Under the pieces are notes generated by a model. That model was given only the letters and a program-made list of their open reading frames with translations, had not been told where the DNA came from and searched no databases. From Macrostomum lignano (taxonomy: Eukaryota), in contig NIVC01003448.1 of assembly GCA_002269645.1 (NCBI GenBank), positions 33,136-97,135 on the forward strand: a DNA stretch of 64,000 nucleotides. The letters run 5' to 3'. Below, one piece after another: positions 3,405 to 57,727 of the stretch. The position numbers were made by a program, and so were the translations under genes. Position 1 is the stretch's first letter. The number at the start of each line of letters is the position of its first letter.

Positions 3405-3599
3405 CTGTATTTGTGCCAGGAAAAGAATTGCTAATTAATGATTTATGTATTCTAGCAATGGTAAATTAAACTTACAGTAAATAAACAATTTAGCAATATA
3501 AATAAACTAAACACAAGGCTAAACTAAGTACTTTGCTTTCGTATTAAAGAATCAACCTTTCAATCAAGTCTGAAAAAACACCAACACCTCCTCACTCAC

Positions 3600-30829: not shown

Positions 30830-31740
30830 TCATTTATCTACCTCTTTGAATACCCCTCTCCCTCCCTAATCTACCTCTTTGAATACCCCTCTCCCTCCCT
30901 TATCTACCTCTTTGAATACCCCTCTCCCTCCCTAATCTACCTCTTTGAATACCCCTCTCCCTCCCTAATCTACCTCTTTGAATACCCCTCTCCCTCCCTT
31001 ATCTACCTCTTTGACTCTCCCTCTCCCTCCCTTATCTACCTCTTTGAATACCCCCTCTCCCTCCCTTATCTACCTCTTTGAATACCCCTCTCCCTCATTT
31101 ATCTACCTCTTTGACTCTCCCTCTCCCTCACTTATCTACCTCTTTGAATACCCCCTCTCCCTCCCTTATCTACCTCTTTGAATACCCCTCTCCCTCCCTT
31201 ATCTACCTCTTTGAATACCCCTCTCCCTCCCTTATCTACCTCTTTGAATACCCCTCTCCCTCCCTTATCTACCTCTTTGACTCTCCCTCTCCCTCCCTTA
31301 TCTACCTCTTTGAATACCCCTCTCCCTCCCTTATCTACCTCTTTGAATACCCCTCTCCCTCCCTTATCTACCTCTTTGAATACCTCTCTCCCTCATTTAT
31401 CTACCTCTTTGAATACCCCCTCTCCCTCCCTTATCTACCTCTTTGAATACCCGTCTCCCTCCCTTATCTACCTCTTTGACTCTCCCTCTCCCTCCCTTAT
31501 CTACCTCTTTGAATACCCCTCTCCCTCCCTTATCTACCTCTTTGAATACCCTTTTCCTCCCTTATCTACCTCTTTGAATACCCCCTCTCCCTCCCTTATC
31601 TACCTCTTTGAATACCTCTCTCCCTCCCTTATCTACCTCTTTGAATACCCCTCTCCCTCCCTTATCTACCTCTTTGAATACCCCCTCTCCCTCCCTTATC
31701 TACCTCTTTGAATACCCCTCTCTCTCCCTTATCTACCTCC
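30830..31740 (+). repeat. 33-bp minisatellite TATCTACCTCTTTGAATACCCCTCTCCCTCCCT
   Basis: Pyrimidine-rich tandem array. Confidence 0.95.
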
Positions 31741-33099
31741 CTGACTCTCCCTCTTCATCTCTTTATGTACTGGATCACCGTCCAGCTTTTTAAGTACAAA
31801 ATACAAAACTGAACGAAAATGAATAAAGTCAACTTTTCTCTTAATTGAATCTCCATAGCTATTCTTAGCTAGTATTATTTTCTCAGACTGCATTTTCCTA
31901 CCGCATAAGGCAGAAGCCCATGCTCGGATTAAACAAATATTTTATATTTTTTGCCAATTAAATGACTCCAGCATGTCAGGTGCGACTTTGCAAAATTTCA
32001 ACTCGCATAGCGGTGGAAAAATATAATGAAAAAAATTTAAATCACGTGAAATGACTGATCAATAAATGCCAATTGTTGAAGCCAATATTAGAGTCACGCT
32101 TTGGAGGCAGCTAATGCGCCTAGTCTGCTATTAGGCAATTAGTAGACTATTAGATAGTTAGACTATTAGGCTGAATTAGCAAAGCAATTATTGTGACCAA
32201 AAACTACCTCTATTAGTCAGTTTAACAGATCAGGCCAGCTTATAAATATGCAAATCATATTACAGCAATTTATAACAAAATGCGTCATGGAAAAATGACA
32301 GAATTACGGCCTACTAATACAATTTTTACAACAAGCTACACAATTAAAATTGAAATAAAAAATCAGGAATTTTAGAGAACTTAAAAAAAAGCATATGCAA
32401 TTTTACTCTACAGTAATACAACGATTGAGTGGGTTATCAACGCCAAAATCACTCGGATTAGCAAGTAGATTATCACATCATAGTTTAGGTAAATTTGTAT
32501 CAACTCCACAGCAGCCATTTAGTATAAATACTTACCAATATAATTAGAATATATATTTAGAACAATTAGCTAGTTAGCAACTATATTAATGAAAGAGTCA
32601 ACACAATTAGATATTGTAACCAAACAAATGCGATCGAAACACAAGAAATTAGACTAATTATTAATTATAAAATAAGCAATTCAGTCAAAATAAATCAGTC
32701 AGACGATTAGGGAATTAGGCAATTTGAAAATTTGGAAATTGATCATGCAGCTAGGCTTATCAGACAATTGGGCATTTAGATCGAATCAAATCGTAAAACA
32801 GTGCAGTGTGTACGCCATCAAGAATTTCAGTTCGTTAGCAGAAAGTGCATGCAAATTTGACAAATGAGAAAATTTGAAAACTAGCTACAGTTCTGAAAGA
32901 ACCGCTCTGAAACTAAAATCAACACAAGTGAAAATCTAAGGAAGAAAATTATTTGCAACAGAATAAATATTGGCGGCACAAAGAAATAAAAGTAAAAATA
33001 GACGCTTTTTTCACTACATATCGGTAGATTGCCTCAGCTCAATTGGAATGAAATGGGGTCTACCAGTTTTCCAGCAAGCCATTTGCCAGCCAGATATTT

Positions 33100-33700
33100 G
33101 AGAGCCACTGCGGGACCTACCAAGAATGACTTCATCTGGAGTCAGCAGCATGATGAAGCGTTCCGAAAGATGACGAGGGAGCTGAGCGTGCCCCTACGAT
33201 GGCCTTTTATGATCAACCTCTCTTATTTACCTCTCGTATCTGCATGGCACACAGATGCTTCCAGACCCAATTATCTCCGCTCTAACCTGAAGCAGAAGCA
33301 GAGCGACTGCTCATGGCGAGTCGTCCAAGCCGGCTCAAGATTCGTTTTGGAGGCCGAGCGTCGTTGCGCAACGATCGAACTTGATCTGCTGGCTGTTGCT
33401 TGAAGAGTGAAAAATATCTTGTATTTTTCTCGAAAGATTGAAACACTTCGAAATAGTAATCGATCACGGACCGCTGAAGCCGATCTCAAATAAGCACGCT
33501 TTGGACGAGATCGACAACCCAAGGTTGCAGCGACTGTCTCTGAAGCCCTACTAGAGCTTGCGTAAGAAGCTCAATGTTGAAGAAGAACTAATACTGGTTG
33601 GAAAGAGATTATTGATACCGGGAGAGATGAGACGAGAGGTGCTCGAACACCTGCCAAGTATGCACCATGGAGCAGCAAAGATGAAAGAGAGCGAAAGACA
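33100..33700 (+). mobile_element. Degenerate Gypsy pol fragments (RT linker, RNase H, integrase Zn finger)
   Basis: TDAS, QAGSRF..EAERRCATIELDLLAVA, LDEIDNPRLQR and KRLLIP..MRREVLEHL..MHHG..KMKE, with stops and frameshifts. Confidence 0.8.
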
Positions 33701-33759
33701 CTATTTAAGCAGCCTCACAACTCAAAAGCAATGCACACACGCGAGAACACGCGAGAATC

Positions 33760-34415
33760 TGGCTGGAAAATGTCTTACTTGCAAATATCGGGCTGGCAAA
33801 TATCTGGCTGCCAAATATCTGGCTGGCAAATATCTGGCTGGAAAATGTCTTACTGGCAAATATCTGGCAGGCACATATCTGGCTGGCAAAAATCTGGCTG
33901 GCTAATATCTGGCTGGAAAATGTCTGGCTGGCAAATATCTAACTGGCAAATATCTGGCTGGCAAATATCTGGTTAGCAAGTATCTGGCGGCAAATATCTG
34001 GCTGGAAAATGTCTGGCTGGCAAAATGTCTGGCTAGCAAATATCGGGCTGGCAAATATCTGGCTGGCAAATATCGGGCTGGCAAGTATCTGGCTGGCAAA
34101 TATCTGGCTGGAAAATTTCTGGCTGGAAATTGTCTGGCTGGAAAATGTCTGGCTGGAAAATGTCTGGCTAGCAAATATCGGGCTGGCAAATATCTGGCTG
34201 GCAAATATCGGGCTGGCAAGTATCTGGCTGGCAAATATCTGGCTGGAAAATTTCTGGCTGGAAATTGTCTGGCTGGAAAATGTCTGGCTGGAAAATGTCT
34301 GGCTGGCAAATATCTGGCTGGCAAGTATCTGGCTGGCAAATATCGGGCTGGCAAATATCTGGCTGGCAAATATCTGGCTGGCAAATATCTGGCTGGAAAA
34401 TGTCTGGCTTGCAAA
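33760..34415 (+). repeat. 15-bp minisatellite TCTGGCTGGCAAATA
   Basis: Tandem array; inverted units at ~33075-33105 and 60662-60900. Confidence 0.95.
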
Positions 34416-34701
34416 CCTAAGTATCCCATAAGAATGGCTTCAGATTTGACATCAGAAGCAAGGGATGTACATGAATAGCATTTGAAGCGAGGACGTCACA
34501 GCAGAAAAAACGGAGGGTTTAGGCGTGCTGCATGAGCAGATCACTGAGTCACGCAGCTACTGGTAGAAAACAAACATTAATAAGCCATCAAGTTGCTCGA
34601 TTACAAAGCAATCCAATGGTGCCAAGAAGCCATGAAGGTAGTCACCCACCGGTGCAACCGCAGTCGCATCTGGCACTCGGCTCAGGACATTCTCACTTTT
34701 T

Positions 34702-36284
34702 TTATTTCGGTGCCCGCAGCTCCTGCAGCCGCTCTTCCACTTTGCTCTCCAGCCACCGAGGCACGTAGCCGAGCATCCTGGAGCTTCTCCTACGCAACTG
34801 CTGCAGCAGCTCCAGATCTTGACAGAAAACTGCAGCCACCATCAGCTCCTGCTCATCCGCATCCTCACTGAGCACCACATCCCGGATCCAGTCTTGAGCA
34901 ATGGAGTCTCCTGCTTCTATCAGATCGAAGCGGAGCGCCCAAAGCAGAGCCTCGAAGTTCACGAAGAAGTAAGTGCCGTAGTTTTCCAGCTGTAGCGGAA
35001 CGAAATCTGCGACAGTCCGATTTCCGATCGGCAGCTCCGGCCGCTTGTCGATGTGAAAGCAGAACTTCCACGCGGAGTCTCGGCTCCTCAGGTGCCGCCA
35101 CACCAAGTCCGCAGTCGCCTCACTCGCCGACCTCTCAGCGGGCCAGTCGATGCCTCTGCTCGCGCTGAACGGCCTGCAGTCGCTAACGACTTTCGCTGCA
35201 TCCTCTCGGTCGCCGAACTTCAGGCAGCTCAGCGCTCTGAGGGACTCTCTCGCCGAGCGGGCGCAGTCTGGCAGCTTGCCGATCAGCTCCGAGAGACGCT
35301 GTCGGGACTCTGGGCTTCGGTCTCCGTCTGACACTCCGAGAAGCGACTCTCTCACGATGCTGTAGATCTCGTGGTACTCGCATACGTTCGCTGCTGACAC
35401 TGGAGCTCTGTAGCCTATCAGTGGCAGAATGAGGAACGGGTGGAAGTGGAATCGGCCCGAGTCGGTGACGGGTCGCAGGCTGTGCTCGAACTCCAGCAGC
35501 AGCTCAGGCAGCCTTTCGATCGCCTCTCTCACTGCATCGGCTGCCTCATTCAACGCTCGAGTCGCCTTCTCAGCTGATGTGATGTCCACGCCTCTCAGAT
35601 ACACAGCGGCATCGCCAAGGAAGAAGTGGTCCATGATCCTGGCGTCAGCTCTGCCTGATCTGCAGTCGCTCTTGAGCATCTGCAGCGAGCGTCTGGTGAG
35701 ACTCACGAGATTCCGAGCGTCGTTCCACTGCTCTGCCGGTGTCTGCTCGAGCATTCGGAACGCGATGGTCTTTGCGTGATACGACTTGAAGCCGTTGTGT
35801 CGGACGGCCTTCTTCAGCAGCCACTTGAGCGTGACGAACAGCTGGCCCTGCAGAGTGGTGAGACTCCGCAGCAGCCGGTTCTCCAGGAAGCTGGTGCTCA
35901 CTCGGAGCTGCTGGCCTTCTTTTCCGGGAGGCGCTGCGTGCACCACGTGACAGGGCGATGAAGCAGAGGTGAGGAGATGCTGGAGCGACTGCAGCACGGA
36001 CTGGGGTATGTTTGAGTCGGAGACTCGGTTCTCAAGCAGCGGCGCGATGGGCGGGTGGCGGCAGAGGCGGCGGGCGTGAACTTCATCGACAGCCGGTCTC
36101 AGGATTGAGCCTCTTTCTTGACGGGCTGGCCTGGATGCTGCAATGCGCGGGAGATGAAGAGACGAGTAGTAAAGAAAAAGTTTTTTCTAACGAAAAAAAC
36201 ATTCATTGCAAGCAATGAAATAGGTTTATCAATACAGTATCTTTATCAATCTTTTTATCGAAATTTAAATTAGCCAGAATAACT

Positions 36285-36372
<88 letters not shown>

Positions 36373-36445
36373 CACAGACAGACAGACAGACAGACACTAA
36401 GACAGACAGACAGACAGACAGACACACAGACACAGACAGACAGCC

Positions 36446-36514
<69 letters not shown>

Positions 36515-36574
36515 CTAAGTTCAGGCAGACAGACAAACAGACAGTCAGACAGACAGACACTAAGACAGGCAGCC

Positions 36575-36605
<31 letters not shown>

Positions 36606-36606
36606 A

Positions 36607-36667
<61 letters not shown>

Positions 36668-36684
36668 CACACAGACAGACAGCC

Positions 36685-36725
<41 letters not shown>

Positions 36726-36861
36726 GCCAAAAAGACAGACAGGCAGAGAGACAGACACACAGACAGACAGAAAACAGACAGACAGACAGACACACACAGA
36801 CAGACAGGCAGAGAGACACACACACAGACAGACAGAAAACAGACAGACAGACAGACAGAAA

Positions 36862-36926
<65 letters not shown>

Positions 36927-36928
36927 AA

Positions 36929-36973
<45 letters not shown>

Positions 36974-37473
36974 AAACAGACAGACAGAAAACAGACAGAC
37001 AGACAGACAGAAAACAGACAGACAGACAGACACACAGGCACACTGACAGGCTGTCTCTCACCGTATCCGGGACTCAAGACGTGTCCGTTGCGGTACTCCA
37101 CTTTTGTCTGAGTCGTCACTCCAGTGCACTCGCACAGATCGATCGGGTGAATCAGACTTCTTCCAAGTAGCCTAATCACGTCAATGTCGGACTCGATGCT
37201 AGTTCTGCCATCCAGAGTGACCAGGCTGTTGCCCCAGCCCTCTGAAAAGCTGCCCACCACGAAAATTTCATCATCATTCAGTCTTCTCCTCAGAACATCC
37301 TGCAGGACATCAGCCGCGGCGCTCTGCAAGGCGGCTCTGGAGTCCACGAATCCGGAGTGGGTCAGCGCTGAGTGCAGCTGCTGGCTGAGGTCATTGTCGC
37401 TGGGAGCAGGTCTGGATGATGGGAGGAGTGGGAGCTGCTGTGCTTCACTATGATTGGCTGAGATCAGATGCAT
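34702..37473 (-). CDS. cGAS/Mab-21-like nucleotidyltransferase (cGLR-like), exons 37473(or 37447)-37062 and 36137-34702; 615 aa if started at 37473
   Basis: NTase motif [10 protein letters not shown]...SDIDV and a third acidic position in AVDEVHA. Mab-21 C-terminal helices [20 protein letters not shown]...L...L..MDHFF. Donor G|GTGAGA and acceptor TTGCAG|CA in phase; ORF intact. Confidence 0.85.
36283..37035 (+). repeat. (CAGA)n microsatellite in the cGLR intron
   Basis: Direct reading. Confidence 0.97.
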
Positions 37474-37996
37474 GTTTCATGAGGAACTTATCGAAAACTC
37501 AATTCGTACCCCAGAGAGTGGCATGGAAATCTGCTCAAGCTTGACTGCTCAAAAGGCTCATGAGGAACATTCTAGATGGGAGGAGGGAAAACTGAGTATA
37601 AAAATTGCAACTGTGTTTGATGCCCTCAGACTGTCTGCCACTCAATCAGTGACAAACTCTGCAGAGTTTAAGATTCAGTTCAGACTTCAGTTTTCCCGCT
37701 GCCGCCTCTGCAGCTGCAAGATCAGAGCTTCAGTGAGCAGCTCAGCTACTCGACACTCAATTCAAATGAAATAAAATTCCCATAAGTAAGGTGTATTTGT
37801 GTTTCATCATCATCTAGCAACCGAGTGATCTGCAAATCCGCCATTCAAAATGGATTCTTTACAAAACTCTGCCAGGTACCTTGATACAGACACCTGCTGC
37901 TTGGAATGGAAACCTAATTGATATACATGAACACCAATTTTGAATTAAAGTAGTCACCAAGTTGAGTAACCAAGTTGCTCAGAAGCGCTCGCTCAC

Positions 37997-40503
37997 CTGT
38001 GTGCAGCCTCTCGGACCGAATTCGGTCGCTCATCGCCCGTCAGCGCACGGTGCAGAATTTGGGCAGATCGCTCACTGCGGAACTCGATGGCACGGCTGAG
38101 AGCAGACTGAAGTGACTCTCGAGATCCAGCCAAAGCGGAGGCCTTGAGAAGTGACTCAACCACGTGATGGTGGTCGTTTTGTGCCGCAATGTAGAGAGGT
38201 GACTCGCCAGTGTTTCGTTGAAGATTGACGTCGGCTCGTGCTTTGAGGAGTCGATCGACTACCTCATGGTGGCCATTTTGTGATGCAATGTAGAGAGGTG
38301 ACTCGCCAGTGTTTCGTTGAAGATTGACGTCGGCTCGTGCTTTGAGGAGTCGATCGACTACCTCATGGTGGCCATTTTGTGATGCAATGTAGAGAGGTGA
38401 CTCGCCAGTGTTTCGTTGAAGATTGACGTCGGCTCGTGCTTTGAGGAGTCGATCGACTACCTCATGGTGGCCATTTTGTGATGCAATGTAGAGAGGTGAC
38501 GAGCCACTGACCTTCTCTTGAAGATTGACGTCGGCTCGTGCTTTGAGGAGTCGATCGACTACCTCATGGTGGCCATTTTGTGATGCAATGTAGAGAGGTG
38601 ACTCGCCAGTGTTTCGTTGAAGATTGACGTCGGCTCGTGCTTTGAGGAGTCGATCGACTACCTCATGGTGGCCATTTTGTGATGCAATGTAGAGAGGTGA
38701 CGAGGCAGTGTTTCGTTGAAGATTGACGTCGGCTCGTGCTTTGAGGAGTCGATCGACTACCTCATGGTGGCCATTTTGTGATGCAATGTAGAGAGGTGAC
38801 GAGCCACTGACCTTCTCTTGAAGATTGACGTCGGCTCGTGCTTTGAGGAGTCGATCGACTACCTCATGGTGGCCATTTTGTGATGCAATGTAGAGAGGTG
38901 ACTCGCCAGTGTTTCGTTGAAGATTGACGTCGGCTCGTGCTTTGAGGAGTCGATCGACTACCTCATGGTGGCCATTTTGTGATGCAATGTAGAGAGGTGA
39001 GCAGCCATCGACTTCTTGAAGATTGAAGTCGGCTCGTGCTTTGAGGAGTCGATCGACTACCTCATGGTGGCCATTTTGTGATGCAATGTAGAGAGGTGAC
39101 TCGCCAGTGTTTCGTTGAAGATTGACGTCGGCTCGTGCTTTGAGGAGTCGATCGACTACCTCATGGTGGCCATTTTGTGATGCAATGTAGAGAGGTGACT
39201 CGCCAGTGTTTCGTTGAAGATTGACGTCGGCTCGTGCTTTGAGGAGTCGATCGACTACCTCATGGTGGCCATTTTGTGATGCAATGTAGAGAGGTGACTC
39301 GCCAGTGTTTCGTTGAAGATTGACGTCGGCTCGTGCTTTGAGGAGTCGATCGACTACCTCATGGTGGCCATTTTGTGATGCAATGTAGAGAGGTGACGAG
39401 CCACTGACCTTCTCTTGAAGATTGACGTCGGCTCGTGCTTTGAGGAGTCGATCGACTACCTCATGGTGGCCATTTTGTGATGCAATGTAGAGAGGTGAGC
39501 AGCCATCGACTTCTTGAAGATTGACGTCGGCTCGTGCTTTGAGGAGTCGATCGACTACCTCATGGTGGCCATTTTGTGATGCAATGTAGAGAGGTGACGA
39601 GCCACTGACCTTCTCTTGAAGATTGACGTCGGCTCGTGCTTTGAGGAGTCGATCGACTACCTCATGGTGGCCATTTTGTGATGCAATGTAGAGAGGTGAG
39701 CAGCCATCGACTTCTTGAAGATTGACGTCGGCTCGTGCTTTGAGGAGTCGATCGACTACCTCATGGTGGCCATTTTGTGATGCAATGTAGAGAGGTGACG
39801 AGCCACTGACCTTCTCTTGAAGATTGACGTCGGCTCGTGCTTTGAGGAGTCGATCGACTACCTCATGGTGGCCATTTTGTGATGCAATGTAGAGAGGTGA
39901 CTCGCCAGTGTTTCGTTGAAGATTGACGTCGGCTCGTGCTTTGAGGAGTCGATCGACTACCTCATGGTGGCCATTTTGTGATGCAATGTAGAGAGGTGAG
40001 CAGCCATCGACTTCTTGAAGATTGACGTCGGCTCGTGCTTTGAGGAGTCGATCGACTACCTCATGGTGGCCATTTTGTGATGCAATGTAGAGAGGTGACG
40101 AGCCAGTGTTGAGTTGAAGATTGACGTCGGCTCGTGCTTGAATTAGTAAATCGACAGCCTCACGATGGCCTTGTTGACATCCAATATGCACTGCCGAGAA
40201 TCCCTCACTGTTCTGTTTGTTGACATCAACACTCTCTCGAATCAGCCTCGCCAAGATGCCGATTCTGCTCAGGTAGCAAGCCCACATCAGCGGTGTCCAC
40301 TCACTTCCTCTCCAAGTCAGAATCGTGTCGACACTCCTCCCACTGACAACGAAGTTCTCCACCGCCTGCAGGCGGTCCGCTTCAATCGCCTCAAAGAGCT
40401 CTTCATCTATGGGCTCGGCTGCGGCATCCCGGCTCGCCCTGCGGCCGAAAACCCGCAAGCAGCAGGCGGCCACCGCGCTGAAGAGTCGCTGCAGAAATCC
40501 CAT
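37997..40503 (-). CDS. Ankyrin repeat protein exon (copy A) with 20 near-identical tandem units; ends in a splice donor
   Basis: Repeats SPLYIASQNGHHEVVDRLLKARADVNLQ with 99/102-bp DNA units. N-terminus MGFLQRLFSAVAACC. CAC AG|GTGAGC at 37997. Confidence 0.95.
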
Positions 40504-41436
40504 GTCAGATTTCGAAGCAAGGAATACCTGAAGAAAGTACTTAAGATGCTTAGAAGAAAGAAATAATTAGTACTCAAGTCGTCCTTGCATCGGAGCTCAC
40601 TCGGATTTCTCCAAGTGCACTCAGAGCGAGCTGCTGTCCATTTTAACCCCAGTGCTGAAGGCTTTTGCTGCTGAGAGCCAATCAGCTTCGCGCGGTTCTC
40701 AACTTCATTCGCGAACTGCTGCCCAGTGCTGCTCAGTAATATCTGTGGGAGCGAGCTGCAAAAATTGGAAACTGCTGTGGTAAATGAGAGAATGCCTGCA
40801 GCTGGCAGAGACGCGGCTTCTGCACGAATAAATTCAGTCAGAGCAGGGACTACTCAAACACCGGGACGGAAAACTAAAATTTTTACGAGGCTGGCTGGCA
40901 ATTATTTGCATTAGAGAGATGCTGTGTTACTTTGTTGTCTATGGTTATTTTCTACTGCTGATAAAAGACCAGCCTCGTAAAAAATTCCTAGTTTCCCGTC
41001 CCGGTGTTTGAGTAGTCCCTGAGTCAGAGTTTCCAGTTTAAATCCACGAATAGCTCAGACTGTTGCAATTGATGCAAAATGCAAAATGTAATTTAATCGC
41101 TAGGTGAAAAATCACTTTAAAACACTAGCCAAAATCATGGTGTAGTGAGGCGCCAGCGAGGAAGTGATGCGCTACGGAAGCAGTCAGGCGCCAGTGAGGT
41201 GCCATACGAGGACATCGTGGCATTTGTGCTATCTCAAATCAAATGACCGAGGTTTCCCATTAGTTTATTTACTAGGGCTCACAATATTTTGTCAAAATGG
41301 CCCTAAGCGGATTCTAGGAGGGCCCGCACCGGGGCTCCCGTCTCTCTTTGTGACAATTTTTTCAAATACCTTTTGGTCGGCAGCAGGTTATGAGAAGTTT
41401 TCTACTGCCTGTGTACATCGCAAAGCCAGGATATGG

Positions 41437-41450
41437 GTTGCCATGGTAAC
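41437..41450. promoter_or_regulatory. RFX X-box-like palindrome GTTGCCATGGTAAC (copy A)
   Basis: Consensus match ~0.93 kb upstream of the ankyrin ATG. Confidence 0.5.
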
Positions 41451-41662
41451 GATTAACAACTCGAATAATAGCAGTTTGTTACATTGTGCCGGAAGGAGGT
41501 TTCGTCCAATCCTACTAACAGTAGTCTGCGATAAATGAGCATTTTATTTAAACTTTGAGTTGCGCACCAGTGACTGCAGCATCCTAGGCTAATTGATGAC
41601 GCAAGACTTGAGTTCATTCATGCACTTTTACAGTACGTGTACAAGAGTGATGCTCCATTTAT

Positions 41663-42370
41663 TAGAGTGCTACTCCATTCAGAGTGCTACTCCATTCAGA
41701 GTGCTACTCCATTCAGAGTGCTACTCCATTCAGAGTGCTACTCCATTCAGAGTGCTACTCCATTCAGAGTGCTACTCCATTCAGAGTGCTACTCCATTCA
41801 GAGTGCTACTCCATTCAGAGTGCTACTCCATTCAGAGTGCTACTCCATTCAGAGTGCTACTCCATTCAGAGTGCTACTCCATTCAGAGTGCTACTCCATT
41901 CAGAGTGCTACTCCATTCAGAGTGCTACTCCATTCAGAGTGCTACTCCATTCAGAGTGCTACTCCATTCAGAGTGCTACTCCATTCAGAGTGCTACTCCA
42001 TTCAGAGTGCTACTCCATTCAGAGTGCTACTCCATTCAGAGTGCTACTCCATTCAGAGTGCTACTCCATTCAGAGTGCTACTCCATTCAGAGTGCTACTC
42101 CATTCAGAGTGCTACTCCATTCAGAGTGCTACTCCATTCAGAGTGCTACTCCATTCAGAGTGCTACTCCATTCAGAGTGCTACTCCATTCAGAGTGCTAC
42201 TCCATTCAGAGTGCTACTCCATTCAGAGTGCTACTCCATTCAGAGTGCTACTCCATTCAGAGTGCTACTCCATTCAGAGTGCTACTCCATTCAGAGTGCT
42301 ACTCCATTCAAAGTGCTACTCCATTCAGAGTGCTACTCCATTCAGAGTGCTACTCCATTCAGAGTACTAC
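41663..42370 (+). repeat. Near-perfect 17-bp minisatellite CAGAGTGCTACTCCATT (~41 units)
   Basis: Direct reading; explains the three repetitive ORFs here. Confidence 0.97.
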
Positions 42371-42679
42371 TCCAATGACCACATGCGCACAGTGGCTGAT
42401 TATAACAAAATTGCTCACAATTGCGCCAGGAATTCGGGTCAGGGGGCTCAGCATCCGGTCAGATGGCATCGCTGATATTTTTGACAGAATTGAAGGCTGC
42501 TTGAGGGATGAAGAGCTGAAACGTTTGATGAAACAGGTGCAAAATATTGAAAATTTATGTTTTTAATTATAGCACAATAAAGCAAACAGATGTGGCATAA
42601 AAGTACAATGAGCAGCAAAACTCAATTTTATAAAGTCTGTCCCTGAACTGCTGAGTCAGTGCTGCAGCTGGGAGTGAGA

Positions 42680-42890
42680 GCTTTGAGTCCCCGCAGACTC
42701 TCAGCTCTCCATCAGCTGCACTGCTTAACGCCCAGTCCCGCAGACTCTCAGCTCTCCATCAGCTGCACTGCTCAGCGCCCAGTCCCCGCAGACTCTCAGC
42801 TCTCCATCAGCTGCACTGCTCAGCGCCCAGTCCCCGCAGACTCTCAGCTCTCCATCAGCTGCACTGCTCAACGCCCAGTCCCGGCAGACT
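42680..42890 (+). repeat. 48-bp tandem repeat (~4 units)
   Basis: GCAGACTCTCAGCTCTCCATCAGCTGCACTGCTCAGCGCCCAGTCCCC. Confidence 0.9.
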
Positions 42891-42894
42891 CTCA

Positions 42895-43395
42895 GCCAAG
42901 AAGTTTACCGGCGCGGAGCTCTGCATCTGCAGACTCCACAGGCAGCCCCGGAAGTCGCTGAGTTGACCGGCCGCAGTCGCCGACATCGAAGCCGCCAGGG
43001 CGCCGCCGTACGGCAGGCCACCGACGAAGCCACCGCCCCGACGTCTCGACGACGCCTCCAGCGGCAGCGTCGCAGAGGCCGCGGCGCTGTCCTCGACGAG
43101 CATCTGCAACCGAATGTCGGACTTTCGACGCCGAGCGACCAGTCGAAACCGACGTCCCAAGCCATCTTCAATTCTGGGCGACTCCAGCGACGCCTCGAGC
43201 GCCGTCAGCAGCTGCGCGGAGCCGACGGTGAAGTCGCAGTTCAGCCGCAGGAGGCCGCGGCTGCTGACGGTGACAGCGATGAAGTCCTGACCGTCGGGCA
43301 GCTCGTCGGCCCTGCAGGCAGGAGCCCGGCAGCTCAAAGATGCCGTCGTGATGGAAACGGGAAGACTGGTGTAAGCATCCCGGATCTGACGGGTC
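42895..43395 (-). CDS. Orphan exon encoding a laminin-G-like domain
   Basis: DFIAVTV..GLLRL..DFTVGS, IEDG..RRFRLVARR, LQMLVED, FVGGLP, FRGCLWSLQM. Phase-2 acceptors at 43395 or 43311; donor unresolved. Confidence 0.6.
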
Positions 43396-43399
43396 CTGC

Positions 43400-43950
43400 T
43401 GTCTCCGTGTGTATCTGAGCGGTTGCTATGCAAAACTGCTGCTGTCTCCGTGTGTATCTGAGCTGTTGCTATGCAAAACTGCTGCTGTCTCCATGTGTAT
43501 CTGAGCTGTTGCTATGCAAAATTGCTGCTGTCTCCATGTGTATCTGAGCTGTTGCTATGCAAAACTGCTGCTGTCTCCATGTGTATCTGAGCGGTTGCTA
43601 TGCAAAACTGCTGCTGTCTTCATGTGTATCTGAGCGGTTGCTATGCAAAATTGCTGCTGTCTCCATGTGTATCTGAGCTGTTGCTATGCAAAACTGCTGC
43701 TGTCTCCATGTGTATCTGAGCTGTTGATATGCAAAACTGCTTCTGTCTCCATGTGTATCTGAGCTGTTGATATGCAAAACTGCTGCTGTCTCCATGTATA
43801 TCTGAGCGGTTGTTATGCAAAACTGCTGCTGTCTCCATGTGTATCTGAGCGGTTGCTATGCAAAACTGCTGCTGTCTCCATGTGTATCTGAGCGGTTGCT
43901 ATGCAAAACTGCTGCTGTCTCCATGTGTATCTGAGTGGTTGCTATGCAAA
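43400..43950 (+). repeat. 43-bp minisatellite TGCAAAACTGCTGCTGTCTCCATGTGTATCTGAGCGGTTGCTA
   Basis: About 13 tandem units abutting the LamG exon. Confidence 0.95.
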
Positions 43951-45690: not shown

Positions 45691-45900
45691 CGCGGCACGT
45701 CAGGACCGGCTGCTGCGGAGTCTCAGCACTCTGCAGGGCCAGCTGTTCGTCACGCTCAAGTGGCTGCTGAAGAAGGCCGTCCGACACAACGGCTTCAAGT
45801 CGTATCACGCAAAGACCATCGCGTTCCAAATGCTCGATCAGACACCGGCTGAGCAATGGAACGACGCTCGGAATCTCGTGAGTCTCACCAGACGCTCGCA
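45690..45900 (+). pseudogene. ~210-bp duplicated fragment of the cGLR exon 2
   Basis: [43 protein letters not shown]...LVSLTRRS, nearly identical to 35690-35880. Confidence 0.9.
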
Positions 45901-46795
45901 AATCTTCTTCATTTGCGCCACGATGCTCGCGAAATAGTTTAACCAAATGACCGATGTTTCTCGCCCAGAAAATGCCGAAAATGGCGCAGAGAATGGAATA
46001 TTCAGCGGTTAACGGAACGATGTATGGCAGAAGTTTTTCTGATGCAGACGATTCGCTTGTTGAATGATTGCTGAACCGTTCAAAGACTTCAGAGTTAACG
46101 CTTAATAACCAAGACACAAGGTTTGTGCTGATTAGATTGGCCATTAGAAAAAAGAATAAAATTGAGAATTTATTCGGACTCTGGTTGCCATACAATGCAA
46201 AAAATATGGTCTGCAGTATAGTAAACGCGACTTGTAGGATTGGAATTAGAAGCTTGTCAAGTATCCACGAGAAACTTGGATGCGAGCTGCAGTGGATAAG
46301 CTGGATAAAACCGTCAATAAATTTTATGCCATTTCCAACGACGACGAACAGGCCCAGCAAAATGCAGGCGGCTATCAGGAATGTAGAGGGCACGGAAGCG
46401 TGCTTATCCAGCACAGGAATCCAGTATGAGAGCCCTTGAAGCAACCAATTTTTGCCTTCCACTGACACTCTGACATTGTCAAGCTTCTTTTTGCTAAACA
46501 ACCGATACAAATAAAACAACGAAGACAGCAAGGCCAAGACTAAAAGGACTAAACGAAACATTTCCGACCATAATAGCTTGAAGTCAGCACAATTCTCGTC
46601 ACCTCTCTCCATGTTGTTGTCTCTTTGTATGAGAAATAGACTCACCAGTGATAAGATCATTAAGCTGATGATGAACACTATCCACTGGAGGGTGAGCTTG
46701 AAGTCATTCATTCTGCTGCTTGTTTGTCTAACTTCAGTTTGCTCATCCTCACTCTTATGAAGCAAGGGGTCGGCTTCGCTTCCACATGATGACAT
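45900..46795 (-). pseudogene. Otopetrin-like N-terminal half (copy A), truncated and fused to the antisense cGLR fragment
   Basis: Paralogous to 57728-58625 (LMANLISTNLVSW, LPYIVPLTAEYSILCAIFG). ATG at 46795 aligns with the copy B start. Confidence 0.85.
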
Positions 46796-47149
46796 GACCA
46801 AAACTGCTGCAATAACGCCGTGGTAGCTCAGGATATCGCTTAAACAGTTCGTAATTCGTTAAGCTTAGACGAAGATATAAATGAGAATACTCTCTTACGA
46901 TAAGGTACTTCTTGACTTTCTAATCTGCCTTTCGAAATTGGGTGTAGACTTATAAAACAAAAAGTGCAGTAGAAAAGTGTAGAGTTGACTGCGCTTGTGC
47001 ACCCAATGCCCTCTTTACCTCCCTCGTGGTTGATAAATATCCGGCTGACAAACTTGTAGACCCGAGTTCATTCCAACTGATGCTTCAGTTCGATAGTGCT
47101 GAGGCTGCTCAGAGATTTTTGGCTAGCCAAACTTATTCAACTTTTTTTG

Positions 47150-52129: not shown

Positions 52130-53507
52130 CTGCAGCCGATGAAGAGCTCTTTGAGGCGATTGAAGCGGACGACTGCAGGCGGTGGAGAACTTCGTTGCCA
52201 GTGGGAGGAGTGTCGACACGATTCTCACTTGGAGAGGAACTGAGTGGACACCGCTGATGCTGGCATGCTACCTGGGCGGAATCGGCATCTTGGTGAGGCT
52301 GATTCGAGAGAGCGTCGACCTCAACAAACAGAAGAGTGAGGGATTCTCAGCAGTGTATGTTGGATGTCAACAAGGCCATCGTAAGGCTGCTGATTTACTA
52401 ATTCAAGCACAAGCCGACGTCAATCTTCAACGAAACACTGGCTCGTCACCTCACTATAGTCTGAGTCAAATCCCTCAAAACCCCCCTCGAGCCGGGTGGT
52501 GGGTGTCTGGCCGGCCGCTCGCTAAGCCGACTCGCACTGGACCCGCGGCGCCGGGTAGACTTGGATTTGCCGCGTGCCGGGGTCCAGGCCGATTCTGATT
52601 GGTTGGCCGCGCAAAGCTTGGGGTACGCAGAAAACTCAACCCTCCGCTGAGTCACAAAATTGGCGTCTAACTTTTAACCTGTTTACGCAAAACAAACTCT
52701 AAACTAAGAGAAAAAAGTACATGGAAACGCGTGACTAAATTAAAGCAAAATACAATAATTAACAACAATAATACAAAACTAACTACAAACCAGCGCAAAA
52801 GATGCTCACACTACAAGTAGGTGGGTAACTGAGTGATGTTTATTTTTGCAGCGTACGAGTAATGTCCTCGATTCCAATTCTATTCATATCTACACATGTG
52901 GCTGTGAATTGGCTATCTTATATCGATTTGAACTGCACTGCTTTGTGCGTGTGGCTGCTCAATTTAAATTGCCATTTTAGACCCTCTCCCTCCCCTGAGC
53001 TGATCGATTTCTATTTATACATACAGTACTTCTTCGCAATGTACATCGTTCGACCTAACTACTCAATTCTATAATACAATGTAAAAGACCAACGCTACAT
53101 TGTAGACCTCTCTACATTGCATCACGAAATGGCCACCATGAGGGAGCAGATCGACTCCTCAAAGCACGAGCCGACGTCAATCTTCAACTCAACACTGGCG
53201 AGTCACCTCTCTACATTGCATCAGCCTATGGCCACCATGAGGTAGTAGATCTACTCCTCAAAGCACGAGCCGACGTCAATCTTCAACTCAACACTGGCGA
53301 GTCACCTCTCTACATTGCGGCACAAAACGACCACCATCACTTGGTTGAGTCACTTCTCAAAGCCTCCGCTTTGGCTGGATTTCGAGAGTCACTTGAGTCT
53401 GCTCTCAGCCGTGCAATCGAGTTCCGCAGTGAGCGATCTGCCCAAATTCTTCACCGTGCGCTGACGGGCGATGAGCGACCGAATTCGGTCGGAGAGGCTG
53501 CAGACAG
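52130..53507 (+). pseudogene. Ankyrin gene copy B: 3 array units, N-terminus deleted, frameshift, 653-bp insertion
   Basis: Colinear with copy A, including the last repeat, C-terminal tail and AG|GTGAGC donor at 53507. Lacks MGFLQ...CC. 1-nt loss at ~52170. Confidence 0.9.
52453..53105. mobile_element. 653-bp non-coding insertion with 5-bp TSD ACCTC
   Basis: ACCTC at 52448-52452 and 53106-53110 duplicates ankyrin codons (TCACCTCTCTAC); termini CACTATAG...TTGTAG. Confidence 0.75.
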
Positions 53508-54479
53508 GTGAGCGCTCCTCGGTTGAGTCCAAGCAGCGCCCTGCGCAGGGCGGGGGAATGACAGGAGACAGCCGCGCTGGATTTCCGGCAGTCGTGGGCG
53601 TTATCTCTTCTCTCCCTGTGCTTTGAAGCCACCCACTGGTTGATCCGAGTGGTGACGACGTGGTGGGGTTGGAGCCACGGGCAGGGGACCAGAGAAAGAA
53701 CCAGTCGAGCTAGCCTTGGCCAAGGTATCGGCCAACTCGTTGATGGGGTGGCTCGAGTGCTCGGGGATCCACCCTAGGGACACCTTGTTGGAAGCGCCTA
53801 CGTGTTTGAGCTGCCCGATGCAGTCGAGGACTGTACGCGAGCAGGTTGTGGTGCTCTCAAGGGGGTGGATTGCCGCTTGACAGTCCGAGTCGAGGATAGT
53901 CTCCTTCCCCCGACACGCTGATTGTACAACTCCATGGCGCCGGAGAGGAATTTTCTAGAACATCGGAGATGCCCGATGTTCTAGAAAACGGTGGAGCAGG
54001 TGCTAGTGTGCTGAGAGAAGGTCGCCACGGTTCTTGTTACGAGTAGTGTAGGCAAAACTGAGTAAGTCATGTTTGCAAGCGAAGGGAAATACGCTTGAAC
54101 AGAACTCTACCGAAGTGACGAAAGTATTTACTTGAGGATCGTGAACTGAAGACTGTGATATTTGGGGTTTGTGAACTGAAGAACGTGCAAATAAGAGCCG
54201 TGCAAATACGTGTGCAAATAAGAGCCGTGCAAATACATGTGCAAATAAGAGCCGTGCAAAAAAAATCAGAAGCAGCTGTTTGAGCACAATTACTTGGGTG
54301 ATCAAGACTGCTCAATTTTATTCACTCATGGCTCTGAGGCGGGGGGTTCCTGTAAACCTCAGACAGAAATCGGCCATATATTTGTTATAATGAATATTTA
54401 TTCCTGTTGTGTGAAACTCATGAGACTTCAGTCTGTAAAATTCCTGGCTATAAGCCTCACATGGCGCTACACAATGTAA

Positions 54480-56282
54480 GTTTGGGGGGTTAACAAAACT
54501 TATTGCCGCAAGCCCTTATGGCAGATCTTTCTAAGAAACCTACAATGCCTGTCAGAGCTCTGCATGAGCACAGCTGGGGAACTCACAGAGCCATCGTCGC
54601 ACCATCCTTGTCCAGCTGGCCTACGACCTACAGCTGGACCTCGTCTCGCTGCAGGAGGTCTCTATCGTGGCTGAGCCGGGGCTCCACTCTGAGGACCTAC
54701 CTCGGAGCCGGCTGGAGCCTCCTGTACACGTCGGCAGACAACCGCGGCCGGGGCGGTGTCAGCGTGCTGATCGGATCGCGCCTCCAGCAGAGCGTGCACT
54801 GCATCTCGCTGTCCCCGCGACTGATGCGGGTCGACCTGCGACTTCGCGCCCGCTGCATCCGGCTGTTCTGCGCGTACGCACCCACCGCTGCTCACCCCGA
54901 GGAGGATCGTGCCTTCTTCGAATTCCTGGCTGGGCAGCTGGAAGAGGTGCCAAACCGCGACACGATGGCAGTGCTCGGAGACCTGAACGCAGTCCCGCCG
55001 CGTCACCAACTGCGACACCATGGCTCCGCTGGCTCTCCGGTCAGACCACCGACTCCTGATCTGCGACTTGCGGCTCCGCGACCAGCTCTACCCGCGTTGG
55101 ACATCCGCGTGAAGCGTCAATTCGCGGGCGGCTTCGTCAGCGCGCTTAGAGACCAGCGCGAGGCGGAGTATTCCGACATCAGCACCGCCGTTAGAGCTGC
55201 TGCAGAGCAGACGGTCCCGCTGATGCGGCCAGCGCAGAAATCGCTGCCTGTCTGGCAGAGCGACCTGTCTATCAGGCAGGCGCGGCTCAACTTTGAGCGA
55301 CTCCGCAGAAACCGGCGACTTACGGGCGACACTGAAGACGCGTTTGAGCGTCTTCTAGATGAGCGGCAGCAGCCTGCTGTCGATGACGCCGTCCGGTACA
55401 TCACTGCAGCCGGCCCCGACGTGAAGAGCCGCGCAGTGTGGACGGCCGTCCGGACTCTGACGGGGCGCAAAAAGCGCGTGGCGCTGAACCTGGCCGGCGA
55501 CACCCCGGAGGAGCGCAGGAATGAATTGCGCGACTTCTTCGCCGGCATTGTGAACGCGCCCGCGTCGCCGCTGCCCGCTAGCTTTGCGCTCCCACTGGAC
55601 ACGCCGCTCCCAGCTGAGGAGGACTTCTGCACCAGACCAGTCGCCACGGAGGACGTTATGCTGTTCGCTCGGAAAACATCAGGCGGCAAGGCGCTCTACC
55701 CCGACGAAGTCCCGGTCGAAGCGCTGCGGCTCCGCTGTGTGGCCTCCCAGGTCACAGGCGTCATGAAGCGCGAGCTCGACGGCGCTCCTGCGCCTACCGA
55801 GTAAACCGTCGCGCACATCGTGCCGATCCCGAAGAAGGCAGGGACAACGCGGAAAGAAGACCACGGCGGGATCTCGCTGATGTCCTGCACCGCGAAGCTC
55901 TTCAACCGGCTACTGCTCGATCGTCTGCAGTCGGTGCTGGACCCGCACCTGCGGTACGAGCAGAACGGATTCCGGCCGCAACGCGGTACAGTGAAACAGA
56001 TCCTCGCACTCCGCCGTGTCATCGAGGAGGCGCGCATCCGACAGTCTACGCTGGTCATTGTCTTCGTTGACTTTCGAAAGGTGTTTGCCTCGGTGTTGAG
56101 AGCCGCGCTCCCCTTTGTCCCTCGAGCCTACCGGGTACCCCAGCAGCTAATCGACGCTGTCATGGCGCTGTACTGCGATACTTGAGCTGCTGTGGTGACG
56201 GCGGACGGCCTGTCTGACCTGTTCGACACTTCATCAGGAGTTCTGCAGAGTGACACGCTAGCGCCGTTCCTCTTCGGGGTGC
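54480..56282 (+). mobile_element. RTE-like LINE, 5' part (AP endonuclease and RT domains 0-4), degenerate
   Basis: LQEVSIV, CAYAPT, VLGDLNA; IVPIPKK, GISLMSCTAKLFNRLL, EQNGFRPQRGT, VFVDFRKVF, GVLQSDTLAPFLF. Stops at 55802-55804 and 56183-56185; ends at the satellite. Confidence 0.9.
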
Positions 56283-57110: not shown

Positions 57111-57727
57111 CCTCTGTGCGCAAATTCGCGGATAGCTAAATACTTTCAGAAAGTAAAAAAACATATTTCATATTTCATATTCACAAGTTACGGACGGAAA
57201 GTGGCTGCATATAGTTAATATCTTCTAGAAGCAAACAGAAAGCAGCTGCTCCTGTGTCAAGACAGACCGCATCAGATTCAATCTACACTTCTGTTACGCT
57301 GCAGCTCTTGCCAAACAAATCCAACCACGGATGTCGAACTTCCGGTCAACCGGAAGCTGTGAAATTCAGATGTGCATTTAGTGCGGTGCCAGCTGATCGC
57401 AGTGTGGGGTTCTTTGCGGTCACCTGAAAAACTGACCGGAAACTTTCAACCTACTGCGGTTAGCGGCAGCTCTCGGTGAGTCAATGCTGCAGATTGGAAT
57501 ATGAGATGGTTGCAGAGCGGTGGCTCCATCAGCAGTCAACTCTGATGCACTGCACTTTCCTACTGTAATTTTTGTTTTAAAAGTCTTCACCAAATTAGGA
57601 AAGACAAAGTTGCCAAGTTATTTAAACGGTGTTATTTTCATTTATCTTTGGCTTCGTCAAAGCTTAAAGAATAAAAGCTGTTTTAGGGATATCCTGAGCT
57701 GCCACGAAGTTAATAGCAGTTTCGGTC

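What the first reader, a model, noticed from the sequence alone, without database searches (positions are those of the whole stretch)
34702..40503. Candidate ankyrin-cGLR fusion: a repeat-variable sensor spliced onto a cGAS-like nucleotidyltransferase
Seen: the ankyrin ORF reads ...AAH AG|GTGAGC at 37997, so its stop codon lies inside a donor consensus, and the same donor is kept in copy B (53507). About 550 bp downstream on the same strand, the cGLR frame has CATAG|T at 37450-37447. The phase-2 AG plus T gives AGT, which is codon 9 of the cGLR ORF. The spliced total is 2507+386+1436 = 4329 nt, or 1442 aa with no stop. Established: cGAS/Mab-21-fold NTases use a G[G/S]...DhD motif plus a third acidic residue, and cGLRs make cyclic dinucleotide immune signals. 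Inference: one protein with a variable ankyrin sensor and an NTase output. Caveat: the acceptor has a weak pyrimidine tract, and an out-of-phase CAG lies 10 nt upstream.
Basis: partly seen in the sequence, partly recalled or inferred. Interest (0 to 1): 0.9.

Follow-up and report, generated by a model that had tools for sequence, protein, structure and literature searches.

The report
Known flatworm ankyrin–cGAS-like fusion gene

Summary
The fusion is real but not new. Window 31702-43503 is byte-identical to GenBank NIVC01003448.1 (Macrostomum lignano, assembly Mlig_3_7). The RNA-derived gene BOX15_Mlig034160g2 (PAA51373.1) spans exactly 34702-40503.

Exon 2 is therefore 350 nt and the full conceptual product is 1430 aa, not 1442.

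Paralogues at 58, 52 and 42% identity keep the same three exons and the same intron phases (2, then 1). Of 41 family representatives, 37 carry ankyrin repeats.

The enzyme part has the cGLR motif (GS, DID, third D). Its confident AlphaFold model matches cGAS and cGLR structures.

Li et al. 2023 already list M. lignano ANK-cGLRs. They cloned five without the ankyrin part, and no flatworm enzyme is in their active panel. Sensor role, product and receptor are untested.

Three side observations stand out:
- The 19 core repeats have DNA-identical 84-nt cores, and all variation sits in 15-18-nt hairpin-tip cassettes.
- A conserved 256-aa C-terminal domain has no match among solved structures.
- The family expansion is seen only in Macrostomum.

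"Copy B" is a broken pseudogene fragment.

The parts
37997..40503 (-). Exon 1 (2507 nt, ends in phase 2). It holds the ATG at 40503, a short N-terminal segment, two diverged ankyrin repeats, 19 near-identical 33/34-aa repeats, a C-terminal capping repeat and a linker ending ...VREAAH + AG.
   Evidence: ORF. Pfam Ank_2 scores 998 bits, E = 0. Repeat dissection. The exon end reproduces PAA51373.1.
38167..40139 (-). Tandem ankyrin-repeat array: 99/102-bp units, 19.8 copies. The 84-nt core is DNA-identical across units and a 15-18-nt hairpin-tip cassette varies (RNTGE x9, EKVSGS x5, EVDGC x4, RNTAS x1).
   Evidence: TRF. Per-unit comparison.
37412..37996 (-). It has no AATAAA or ATTAAA.
   Evidence: The equivalent phase-2 intron is present in paralogues L002, L003 and L004.
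37062..37411 (-). Exon 2 (350 nt, ends in phase 1). It encodes the NTase N-terminal spine helix, strand beta-1, G-S (37254-37249) and D-I-D (37188-37180).
   Evidence: The exon length matches 347-362 nt in paralogues.
36138..37061 (-). Intron 2 (924 nt, phase 1), GTGAGA...TTGCAG, mostly a (CTGT)n microsatellite (36285-37049).
   Evidence: A phase-1 intron is conserved at this position in paralogues.
34702..36137 (-). Exon 3 (1436 nt including stop TAA 34704-34702). It encodes the third catalytic Asp (GAT 36087-36085), the Mab-21/cGAS helix bundle (SYHAKT...) and the C-terminal domain. An AATAAA (34706-34701) overlaps the stop.
34705..35472 (-). Family-specific C-terminal domain (256 aa) of unknown fold and function.
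   Evidence: AF2 pLDDT 86.9, pTM 0.87. Best PDB Foldseek E = 1.5. No Pfam or PADLOC hit. Conserved across the family.
52138..53514 (+). Copy B: a partial, disrupted duplicate of exon 1 only. It has no ATG, a frameshift and a 650-bp insertion at 52456-53106. Homology to copy A stops 7 nt after the donor and no NTase exons follow.

Best explanation
Window 34702-40503 (minus strand) is a single three-exon protein-coding gene of Macrostomum lignano. It is already in GenBank as BOX15_Mlig034160g2 / PAA51373.1.

Gene structure:
- Exon 1 (40503-37997) encodes about 22 ankyrin repeats.
- A 585-nt phase-2 intron (37996-37412) is removed.
- Exon 2 (37411-37062) and exon 3 (36137-34702) are separated by a 924-nt phase-1 microsatellite intron. 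They encode a cGAS-like (Mab-21 fold) nucleotidyltransferase with an intact GS / DxD / D active-site motif, followed by a 256-aa family-specific domain.
- The conceptual product is 1430 aa, about 159 kDa.

Shown here: locus identity, exon structure, conserved intron phases, domain architecture, fold and motif.

Inferred by analogy with ankyrin-repeat proteins and with cGAS/cGLRs: the ankyrin solenoid binds a protein or other ligand, or tethers and regulates the enzyme. This controls the GS activation loop of the NTase, which then makes a nucleotide second messenger for a receptor not yet identified in this animal.

The gene is one member of a large ANK-cGLR expansion seen only in Macrostomum in the library searched. 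Li et al. 2023 already catalogued ANK-cGLRs from this species.
For: - Locus identity: L005 (NIVC01003448.1) equals window 31702-43503 reverse-complemented with 0 mismatches, and the called gene spans exactly 5802 nt.
- Junction: the NTase part of PAA51373.1 is 595/595 identical to my splice and the junction reads REAAH|RPAPSDND. The whole annotated protein is rebuilt exactly with junctions 37997|37411 and 37062|36137.
- Annotation basis: the GenBank annotation of Mlig_3_7 comes from RNA-seq and transcriptome assemblies, cut at experimentally mapped trans-splice and poly(A) sites (PMC5730564).
- Paralogues: P0007, P0011 and P0023 (58, 52 and 42% identity) share three exons, a phase-2 then a phase-1 intron, and an exon 2 of 347-362 nt. 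In L002 there is no in-frame ATG upstream of the catalytic motifs, so fusion is obligatory there.
- No AATAAA or ATTAAA lies in intron 1.
- Family: 37 of 41 representatives have Ank and 32 of 41 have Mab-21_C.
- Motif: VVGS-x20-DIDV-x54-VDE is conserved across the family.
- Sequence homology: a profile search of PDB sequences gives cGAS at E = 1.8e-5.
- Fold: the AF2 model has pLDDT 88.4 and pTM 0.89. Foldseek top hits are all cGAS, Cv-cGLR1 or Sp-cGLR1, with probability 1.00 and TM (normalised to target) 0.5-0.57.
- Literature: Li et al. 2023 Table S2 lists M. lignano cGLRs with N-terminal Ank_2, and Table S3 lists five cloned ones.
Against: - I did not see raw RNA reads. The evidence for the junction is an RNA-derived annotation plus conservation.
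- The same annotated CDS also removes three single repeats as 99/99/102-nt GT-AG 'introns'. These may be aligner artefacts, so the model is not flawless.
- This protein's own Pfam Mab-21_C score is 16.3 bits, below the 24.1 cut-off, and Pfam Mab-21 (N-terminal) does not hit.
- The residue before GS is V, not the Q/T of the strict motif, and the GS-to-DxD spacing (20) is at the upper limit.
- No enzymatic activity is reported for any M. lignano cGLR.
- No STING or other receptor is established for this species.
Confidence: 0.88

Rival explanations
1. Two separate genes: an ankyrin-only protein ending at TGA 37993, and a stand-alone 615-aa NTase starting at ATG 37473. They could be independently transcribed or form a trans-spliced operon pair.
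For: Both ORFs exist. ATG 37473 is in frame and the short upstream ORF is also open in sister locus L001. M. lignano does use spliced-leader trans-splicing and polycistronic precursors. Some database models lack Ank.
Against: - The annotated RNA-derived CDS joins them at this very locus, and the TBONE pipeline did not cut between them.
- Paralogue L002 has no in-frame ATG before the catalytic motif.
- Intron phase and position are conserved down to 42% identity.
- There is no poly(A) signal in intron 1.
- 37 of 41 family representatives carry Ank. The NCBI models without Ank are partial or N-terminally truncated.
- After acceptor 37411 there is no in-frame Met before the GS motif.
Confidence: 0.04
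2. The reader's junction (37997 joined to 37447, a 1442-aa protein) is the main splice form.
For: It is in frame and stop-free, and it is the most upstream acceptor with that property. It could be a minor alternative acceptor adding 12 residues.
Against: - PAA51373.1 and all close paralogue models read REAA[HD]R[PL]APSD, which requires 37411.
- The pyrimidine fraction is 60%, against 85% for 37411.
- Exon 2 would be 386 nt, against 347-362 nt in paralogues.
Confidence: 0.05
3. The gene is a real fusion, but the Mab-21 domain is not a ligand-activated cyclic-nucleotide synthase. It would be catalytically silent or serve a non-immune role, as in the MAB21L1/2 type, with the ankyrin array acting as a scaffold.
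For: - The five M. lignano cGLRs cloned by Li et al. are not among the 15 active enzymes.
- Most platyhelminths have lost cGLR signalling.
- The strict h[QT]GS motif is not met (V), and the Pfam score is weak.
- No receptor is known.
Against: - GS, DxD and the third Asp are conserved across dozens of diverged paralogues. This is unexpected without catalysis.
- The Li et al. constructs lacked the ankyrin domain and were tested only with dsDNA and poly I:C, so inactivity is uninformative.
- The fold matches active cGAS and cGLRs.
Confidence: 0.3
4. The 20-repeat ankyrin array (and hence the 'repeat variability') is partly an assembly artefact of near-identical 99-bp units.
For: The cores are 99.9% identical. 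The RNA-derived model has 17 repeats, against 20 in the genome. The sister locus has 9 core repeats. The Mlig_3_7 assembly is described as redundant.
Against: The tip cassettes give the array an aperiodic, non-degenerate order, which long reads can anchor. The three missing repeats fit GT-AG gap placement by a spliced aligner.
Confidence: 0.2

Closest known systems
GenBank PAA51373.1, hypothetical protein BOX15_Mlig034160g2 (Macrostomum lignano, contig NIVC01003448.1)
   Same: It is this locus. The DNA is identical, the gene span (34702-40503) is the same, the ankyrin-to-NTase junction is the same, and the NTase part is 595/595 identical.
   Different: The deposited CDS is 1330 aa. It skips three single ankyrin repeats that the genomic ORF contains, so the continuous exon gives 1430 aa. 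It is named only 'hypothetical protein'.
M. lignano ANK-cGLRs in Li et al. 2023 (Cell; preprint PMC9980059): Table S2 (PAA67649, PAA58690, PAA68676, PAA86972, PAA45980, PAA68216) and Table S3 constructs 89-93
   Same: Same species, same family (GSxxEGWGNSL...SDIDV...RPAxD motifs) and same N-terminal Ank_2 plus cGLR architecture.
   Different: These are different paralogues. I could not find this accession in the stored tables, which were truncated when stored. The constructs were expressed without the ankyrin domain.
[quoted passage not shown] 2023, Fig. 4C)
   Same: An ANK module appended to a cGLR NTase core.
   Different: They come from a cnidarian and are only a few genes. No near-identical long repeat array or extra C-terminal domain was examined here.
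Human/mouse cGAS, Drosophila cGLR1, Cv-cGLR1 (8gjw), Sp-cGLR1 (8gjy)
   Same: Same fold (Foldseek probability 1.00), the same catalytic motif layout and the SYHxKT helix-bundle signature.
   Different: Identity is 13-18%. There is no N-terminal ankyrin array or 256-aa C-terminal domain. The GS-to-DxD loop is longer (20 residues) and the DxD-to-D spacing shorter (54). Ligand and product are unknown here.
Designed ankyrin repeat proteins and TALE repeat arrays (analogy only, from general knowledge)
   Same: Arrays of near-identical 33-34-aa repeats in which variation is confined to a few surface positions. Here this is the beta-hairpin tip, which overlaps the positions randomised in DARPins.
   Different: No homology to TALEs. 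Only 3-4 cassette types occur. No evidence of code-like recognition.

Membership tests
cGLR (cGAS-like receptor), criteria of Li et al. 2023 | G[S/G] activation-loop motif plus [DE]h[DE] - X50-90 - [DE] catalytic triad (strict form h[QT]GS X8-20 [DE]h[DE]h X50-90 h[DE]h) | tested here: met
   VVGS(889-890)-x20-DIDV(911-914)-x54-VDE(D970), conserved in the family. Caveats: V replaces Q/T before GS, and the spacing of 20 is at the upper limit. Criteria quoted.
cGLR (cGAS-like receptor), criteria of Li et al. 2023 | Sequence homology across the NTase core and the C-terminal helix bundle | tested here: inconclusive
   The family profile hits cGAS at E = 1.8e-5, but only over about 60 residues of the helix bundle. 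Pfam Mab-21_C reaches E <= 0.001 in 32 of 41 relatives. This protein alone scores 16.3 bits, below the 24.1 cut-off. The NTase core has no sequence-level Pfam hit.
cGLR (cGAS-like receptor), criteria of Li et al. 2023 | Predicted structural homology to known cGAS/cGLR/CD-NTase enzymes | tested here: met
   AF2 pLDDT 88.4, pTM 0.89. All 50 listed Foldseek PDB hits are cGAS or cGLRs, E from 6e-7, probability 1.00, TM (target) 0.46-0.57.
cGLR (cGAS-like receptor), criteria of Li et al. 2023 | [quoted passage not shown] | not testable with these tools
   No biochemical data exist for this protein. The M. lignano constructs in Li et al. are not in the active panel.
Ankyrin-repeat proteins | Tandem 33-aa helix-turn-helix/beta-hairpin repeats matching Pfam Ank models above threshold | tested here: met
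   Ank_2 998 bits, Ank 554 bits, 18-21 matched stretches. 99-bp period, 19.8 copies.
ANK-cGLR fusion architecture (Li et al. 2023, Fig. 1C / Table S2) | Ankyrin repeats and the cGLR domain encoded in one mature mRNA and polypeptide | tested here: met
   The RNA-derived GenBank CDS of this locus is reproduced exactly across the junction. The phase-2 intron is conserved in three diverged paralogues. Raw reads were not inspected.
MAB21L1/L2-type developmental Mab-21 proteins | Mab-21 fold without a complete catalytic site | tested here: not met
   A complete acidic triad and the GS loop are present and conserved, so the gene is not filed here. The definition is taken from Li et al..

The most novel reading that the evidence does not exclude
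The Macrostomum ANK-cGLR family could be a rapidly reshuffling, germline-encoded receptor repertoire. Near-identical ankyrin units with interchangeable hairpin-tip cassettes, and copy numbers that differ between loci, would set ligand specificity for non-nucleic-acid ligands. The cGLR core would convert binding into a nucleotide signal. The conserved C-terminal domain, which has no match among solved structures, would be a new regulatory or signalling module. This would be a pattern-recognition logic not yet demonstrated for any cGLR.
Probability: 0.12. Interest if true: 0.75.

Novelty: already known. Interest (0 to 1): 0.27.

Why it matters
As a gene-structure call it adds little. The fusion is already in GenBank, and ANK-cGLR fusions, including ones from this species, are in the published cGLR catalogue.

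What remains open, and is sharpened a little here, is what an appended ankyrin array does to a cGAS-like enzyme. The published screen removed the ankyrin part and found no active flatworm enzyme.

M. lignano is transgenic- and RNAi-tractable. It carries at least 80 diverged clusters of this architecture, so it is a practical system in which to ask whether cGLRs can sense ligands through an accessory repeat domain.

The corrected exon map (1430 aa, junction 37997|37411) is what anyone cloning the full-length protein would need.

Tried and rejected
- Pfam on the 615-aa stand-alone NTase translation gave no hit at E <= 0.01. At E <= 10 only a sub-threshold Mab-21_C hit appeared.
- The first PDB profile search was swamped by ankyrin hits because alignment A1 kept the ankyrin columns. 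I repeated it with an NTase-only alignment.
- PADLOC gave nothing for the NTase core or the C-terminal domain.
- The C-terminal domain had no significant PDB fold match; the best E was 1.5, to a TRIF N-terminal domain with TM 0.2-0.3. I rejected this as meaningless.
- Literature searches for Macrostomum with cGLR, Mab-21 or STING found nothing relevant.
- A search for PAA51373 and five sister accessions in the Li et al. supplements found nothing, but three of the tables were truncated when stored. Absence there is uninformative.
- My exon mapper could not rebuild P0001 on L001, presumably because of repeat collapse in that model. I used P0036/L005 instead.
- I considered spliced-leader AUG donation at acceptor 37411. 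From general knowledge, flatworm spliced leaders end in AUG. I rejected the idea because that AUG would be out of frame with the NTase, which needs two preceding bases.
- I considered copy B as support for the donor and rejected it, because copy B is a pseudogene fragment.
- Whether M. lignano has STING could not be resolved with the tools available.

Full report
**What is in the sequence**

On the minus strand there is an 836-aa ankyrin ORF (40503..37993). Downstream lie an ATG-initiated ORF from 37473 carrying ...[11 protein letters not shown]...ESDIDV..., a (CTGT)n-filled gap, and a 431-aa ORF ending at 34702.

40503-37997 (2507 nt) + 37447-37062 (386 nt) + 36137-34702 (1436 nt) = 4329 nt, or 1442 codons with no internal stop.

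**Whose genome, and is the gene already known**

A search with the NTase part returned only Macrostomum lignano proteins. Many were already annotated as Ank + Mab-21-like.

One cluster member, P0036 = PAA51373.1 (BOX15_Mlig034160g2, 1330 aa), is 595/595 identical to the window's NTase part. Across the junction it reads REAAH|[13 protein letters not shown].

Its contig stretch (NIVC01003448.1, 64837-76638) is identical, with zero mismatches, to window 31702-43503. The called gene spans exactly 5802 nt, which is 34702-40503.

That annotation was built from RNA-seq and de novo/genome-guided transcript assemblies. Transcripts were cut wherever trans-splice or poly(A) sites had been mapped experimentally (Wudarski et al. 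2017, PMC5730564). The annotated fusion is thus transcript-based, and no gene boundary was placed between the two halves.

**The junction**

PAA51373.1 can be rebuilt exactly from the genome only with these junctions:
- donor last base 37997 joined to acceptor first base 37411 (CATCATCCAG|ACCTGC; AG+A = Arg);
- 37062 joined to 36137.

Its upstream 20 nt are 60% pyrimidine, against 85% for 37411.

The corrected gene has exon 1 of 2507 nt, intron 1 of 585 nt (phase 2), exon 2 of 350 nt, intron 2 of 924 nt (phase 1) and exon 3 of 1436 nt. This gives 4293 nt, or 1430 aa.

**Independent support from paralogues**

Three diverged paralogues, P0007, P0011 and P0023 (58, 52 and 42% identity), map to their loci with the same three exons. 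All have a phase-2 first intron at the same point, an exon 2 of 347-362 nt and a phase-1 second intron.

In L002 the ankyrin ORF ends GAA AA|GTAAGT, so its TAA stop again lies inside the donor. No in-frame ATG precedes the catalytic motif there, so the NTase can only be made as a fusion.

A stop inside the donor follows automatically from a phase-2 GTRAGT donor. It is expected rather than evidential.

Intron 1 has no AATAAA or ATTAAA. The only AATAAA in the gene overlaps the final stop codon.

An HMM search of 1.84 billion cluster representatives found 83 clusters at E < 1e-30. In most of them the NTase starts several hundred residues into the protein. Of 41 representatives scanned, 37 have Ank_2 and 32 have Mab-21_C.

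Sixteen of the 20 representatives I looked up are M. lignano proteins, including every one stronger than about E = 1e-27. The first named hit from another species is a bivalve protein at E about 2e-13, and it matches only part of the core.

**Is it a cGLR**

The family conserves hVGS-x20-[S]D[IV]D[VI]-x54-RPAhDxV. In this gene the residues are:
- G889-S890 (37254-37249);
- D911 and D913 (37188-37180);
- D970 (36087-36085).

This meets the G[S/G] + [DE]h[DE]-X50-90-[DE] rule of Li et al., although V replaces their Q/T.

Sequence-level signals are weak for this protein alone. Pfam Mab-21_C scores 16.3 bits against a cut-off of 24.1. The family profile, however, hits cGAS at E = 1.8e-5 over the SYHxKT helix region.

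The AlphaFold2 model is confident (pLDDT 88.4, pTM 0.89). It shows the expected order: spine helix, beta-1, GS loop, a beta-2 strand carrying DxD, and a later strand carrying the third Asp.

All 50 listed Foldseek PDB hits are cGAS or cGLRs (Cv-cGLR1, Sp-cGLR1), with probability 1.00.

The computed pI of the NTase core is 8.65. The ankyrin part is 6.5 and the C-terminal domain 5.5.

**Comparison with the literature**

Li et al. 2023 (PMC9980059) state that 87% of cGLRs are stand-alone but some carry TPR or ankyrin modules. They show ANK- and death-domain-fused cGLRs in the coral Stylophora, and they note that most, but not all, platyhelminths lack cGLRs.

Their Table S2 lists M. lignano accessions with N-terminal Ank_2. 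Their Table S3 lists five M. lignano constructs (numbers 89-93). These are plainly the same family and begin after the ankyrin region.

The main text never mentions Macrostomum. The 15 active enzymes are described as coming from insects, anemones, molluscs, hydras and corals.

The architecture is therefore already known, including in this species. Its function, and the contribution of the ankyrin array, are not.

**Mechanism**

Shown: one gene, one spliced mRNA, and the domain order ANK(~22) - cGLR NTase - unknown domain.

Inferred from what ankyrin solenoids and cGAS/cGLRs are known to do:
- The ankyrin array binds a partner or ligand, or tethers or autoinhibits the enzyme.
- This gates the GS activation loop.
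- The NTase condenses NTPs into a second messenger.
- An unidentified receptor reads that messenger.

I put about 0.9 on the gene structure and about 0.5-0.6 on ligand-gated nucleotide signalling. The main functional rival is a catalytically silent or non-immune protein, which I put at about 0.3.

**The 'repeat-variable' claim**

The array has 19 internal units. Their 84-nt core differs at 1 position in 19 x 84 nt. The 15-18-nt hairpin-tip cassette comes in discrete versions: RNTGE x9, EKVSGS x5, EVDGC x4 and RNTAS x1.

The same core sequence, with 0-1 differences, occurs in the sister locus L001. That locus has 9 core units and a partly different cassette set, although the unique flanks are only 92-96.6% identical. 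This points to concerted evolution of the cores with retained tip diversity, at positions that normally face ligands.

It is a genuine and somewhat unusual pattern, but there are only 3-4 cassette types. An assembly contribution also cannot be excluded, because the RNA-derived model has 17 tips against 20 in the genome.

Each unit contains CATGAG|GTAGTC. The three repeats missing from PAA51373.1 correspond to 99/99/102-nt GT-AG gaps. These are either spliced-aligner artefacts or cryptic in-array splicing.

**Copy B and other fragments**

Copy B (52138-53514, plus strand) matches only exon 1 and its upstream region. The match ends 7 nt after the donor. Copy B lacks the ATG, is frameshifted and carries a 650-bp insertion. 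A retroelement follows it rather than NTase exons. It gives no support for the donor.

Small gene fragments also lie at 45701-45898 (NTase) and 24589-24394 (N-terminus).

**The C-terminal domain**

Residues 1175-1430 (35472-34705) are conserved throughout the family and fold confidently (pLDDT 86.9). They have no PDB fold match (best E = 1.5) and no Pfam or PADLOC hit. This is the least-explained part of the protein.

**Verdict**

Novelty is 'already known'. Interest is low to moderate. It rests on the unexplained ankyrin cassette pattern, the orphan C-terminal domain and the size of the Macrostomum-only expansion, not on the fusion itself.

Noticed in passing
window 38167-40139 (-), and L001 6319-7364: The 84-nt core of the ankyrin repeat unit is DNA-identical across 19 units here (1 difference in total). 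It is also identical in a paralogous locus whose unique flanks are only 92-96.6% identical. All variation sits in a 15-18-nt hairpin-tip cassette with 3-4 discrete versions.
   Followed up: partly
window 40059-39961, 38961-38863, 38562-38461 (-): The GenBank CDS PAA51373.1 omits exactly three single repeats. Each gap can be written as a GT-AG 'intron' CATGAG|GTAGTC...CATGAG| of 99, 99 or 102 nt. Every repeat carries this donor-like site, so the gaps may be spliced-aligner artefacts or cryptic in-array splicing.
   Followed up: partly
window 34705-35472 (-): A conserved 256-aa C-terminal domain follows the cGAS-like fold. Its AF2 model is confident, but it has no PDB fold match and no Pfam or PADLOC hit.
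   Followed up: yes
family-wide (P0043-P0178): There are at least 83 clusters at 50% identity with E < 1e-30. One of the 41 representatives scanned also carries a caspase (Peptidase_C14) domain.
   Followed up: partly
window 52138-53514 (+): Copy B is a pseudogene fragment of exon 1: the ATG is deleted, there is a frameshift, and a 650-bp insertion lies at 52456-53106. Homology ends 7 nt past the donor.
   Followed up: yes
window 45701-45898 (+) and 24589-24394 (-): There are two isolated gene fragments. One is a 198-bp piece of the NTase helix-bundle region (92% aa identity), antisense next to an otopetrin exon. The other is a piece of the N-terminal ankyrin region at about 73% identity.
   Followed up: no
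window 45884-46982 (-) and 57550-59797 (+): Two otopetrin-like genes (Pfam PF03189) in opposite orientation, about 71% identical at the DNA level, flank the region. The second ends in an HHDAA[VF]S coding minisatellite (59415-59785).
   Followed up: no
window 1977-4986 (-) and 54503-56185 (+): There are Helitron-like ORFs (Helitron_like_N, PIF1 helicase). A long ORF and a neighbouring one downstream of copy B look like a retroelement by eye (no domain search hit it).
   Followed up: no
window 36285-37049 (-): Intron 2 is almost entirely a (CTGT)n microsatellite of about 194 copies. Translated, it mimics a Cys/Leu/Ser-rich ORF. The sister locus L001 has the same feature.
   Followed up: no
NTase part residues 89, 94, 96, 143, 180 (window exons 2-3): His and Cys residues (H89, C94, C96, C143, C180) are invariant or nearly so across the family. 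They may form a metal site placed differently from the cGAS zinc thumb. This was not tested.
   Followed up: no
window 40503-40440 (-): The N-terminus MGFLQRLFSAVAACCLRVF is hydrophobic and has a Cys pair, so it could be a lipidation or membrane-anchor signal. It is absent from the more distant paralogue P0007.
   Followed up: no
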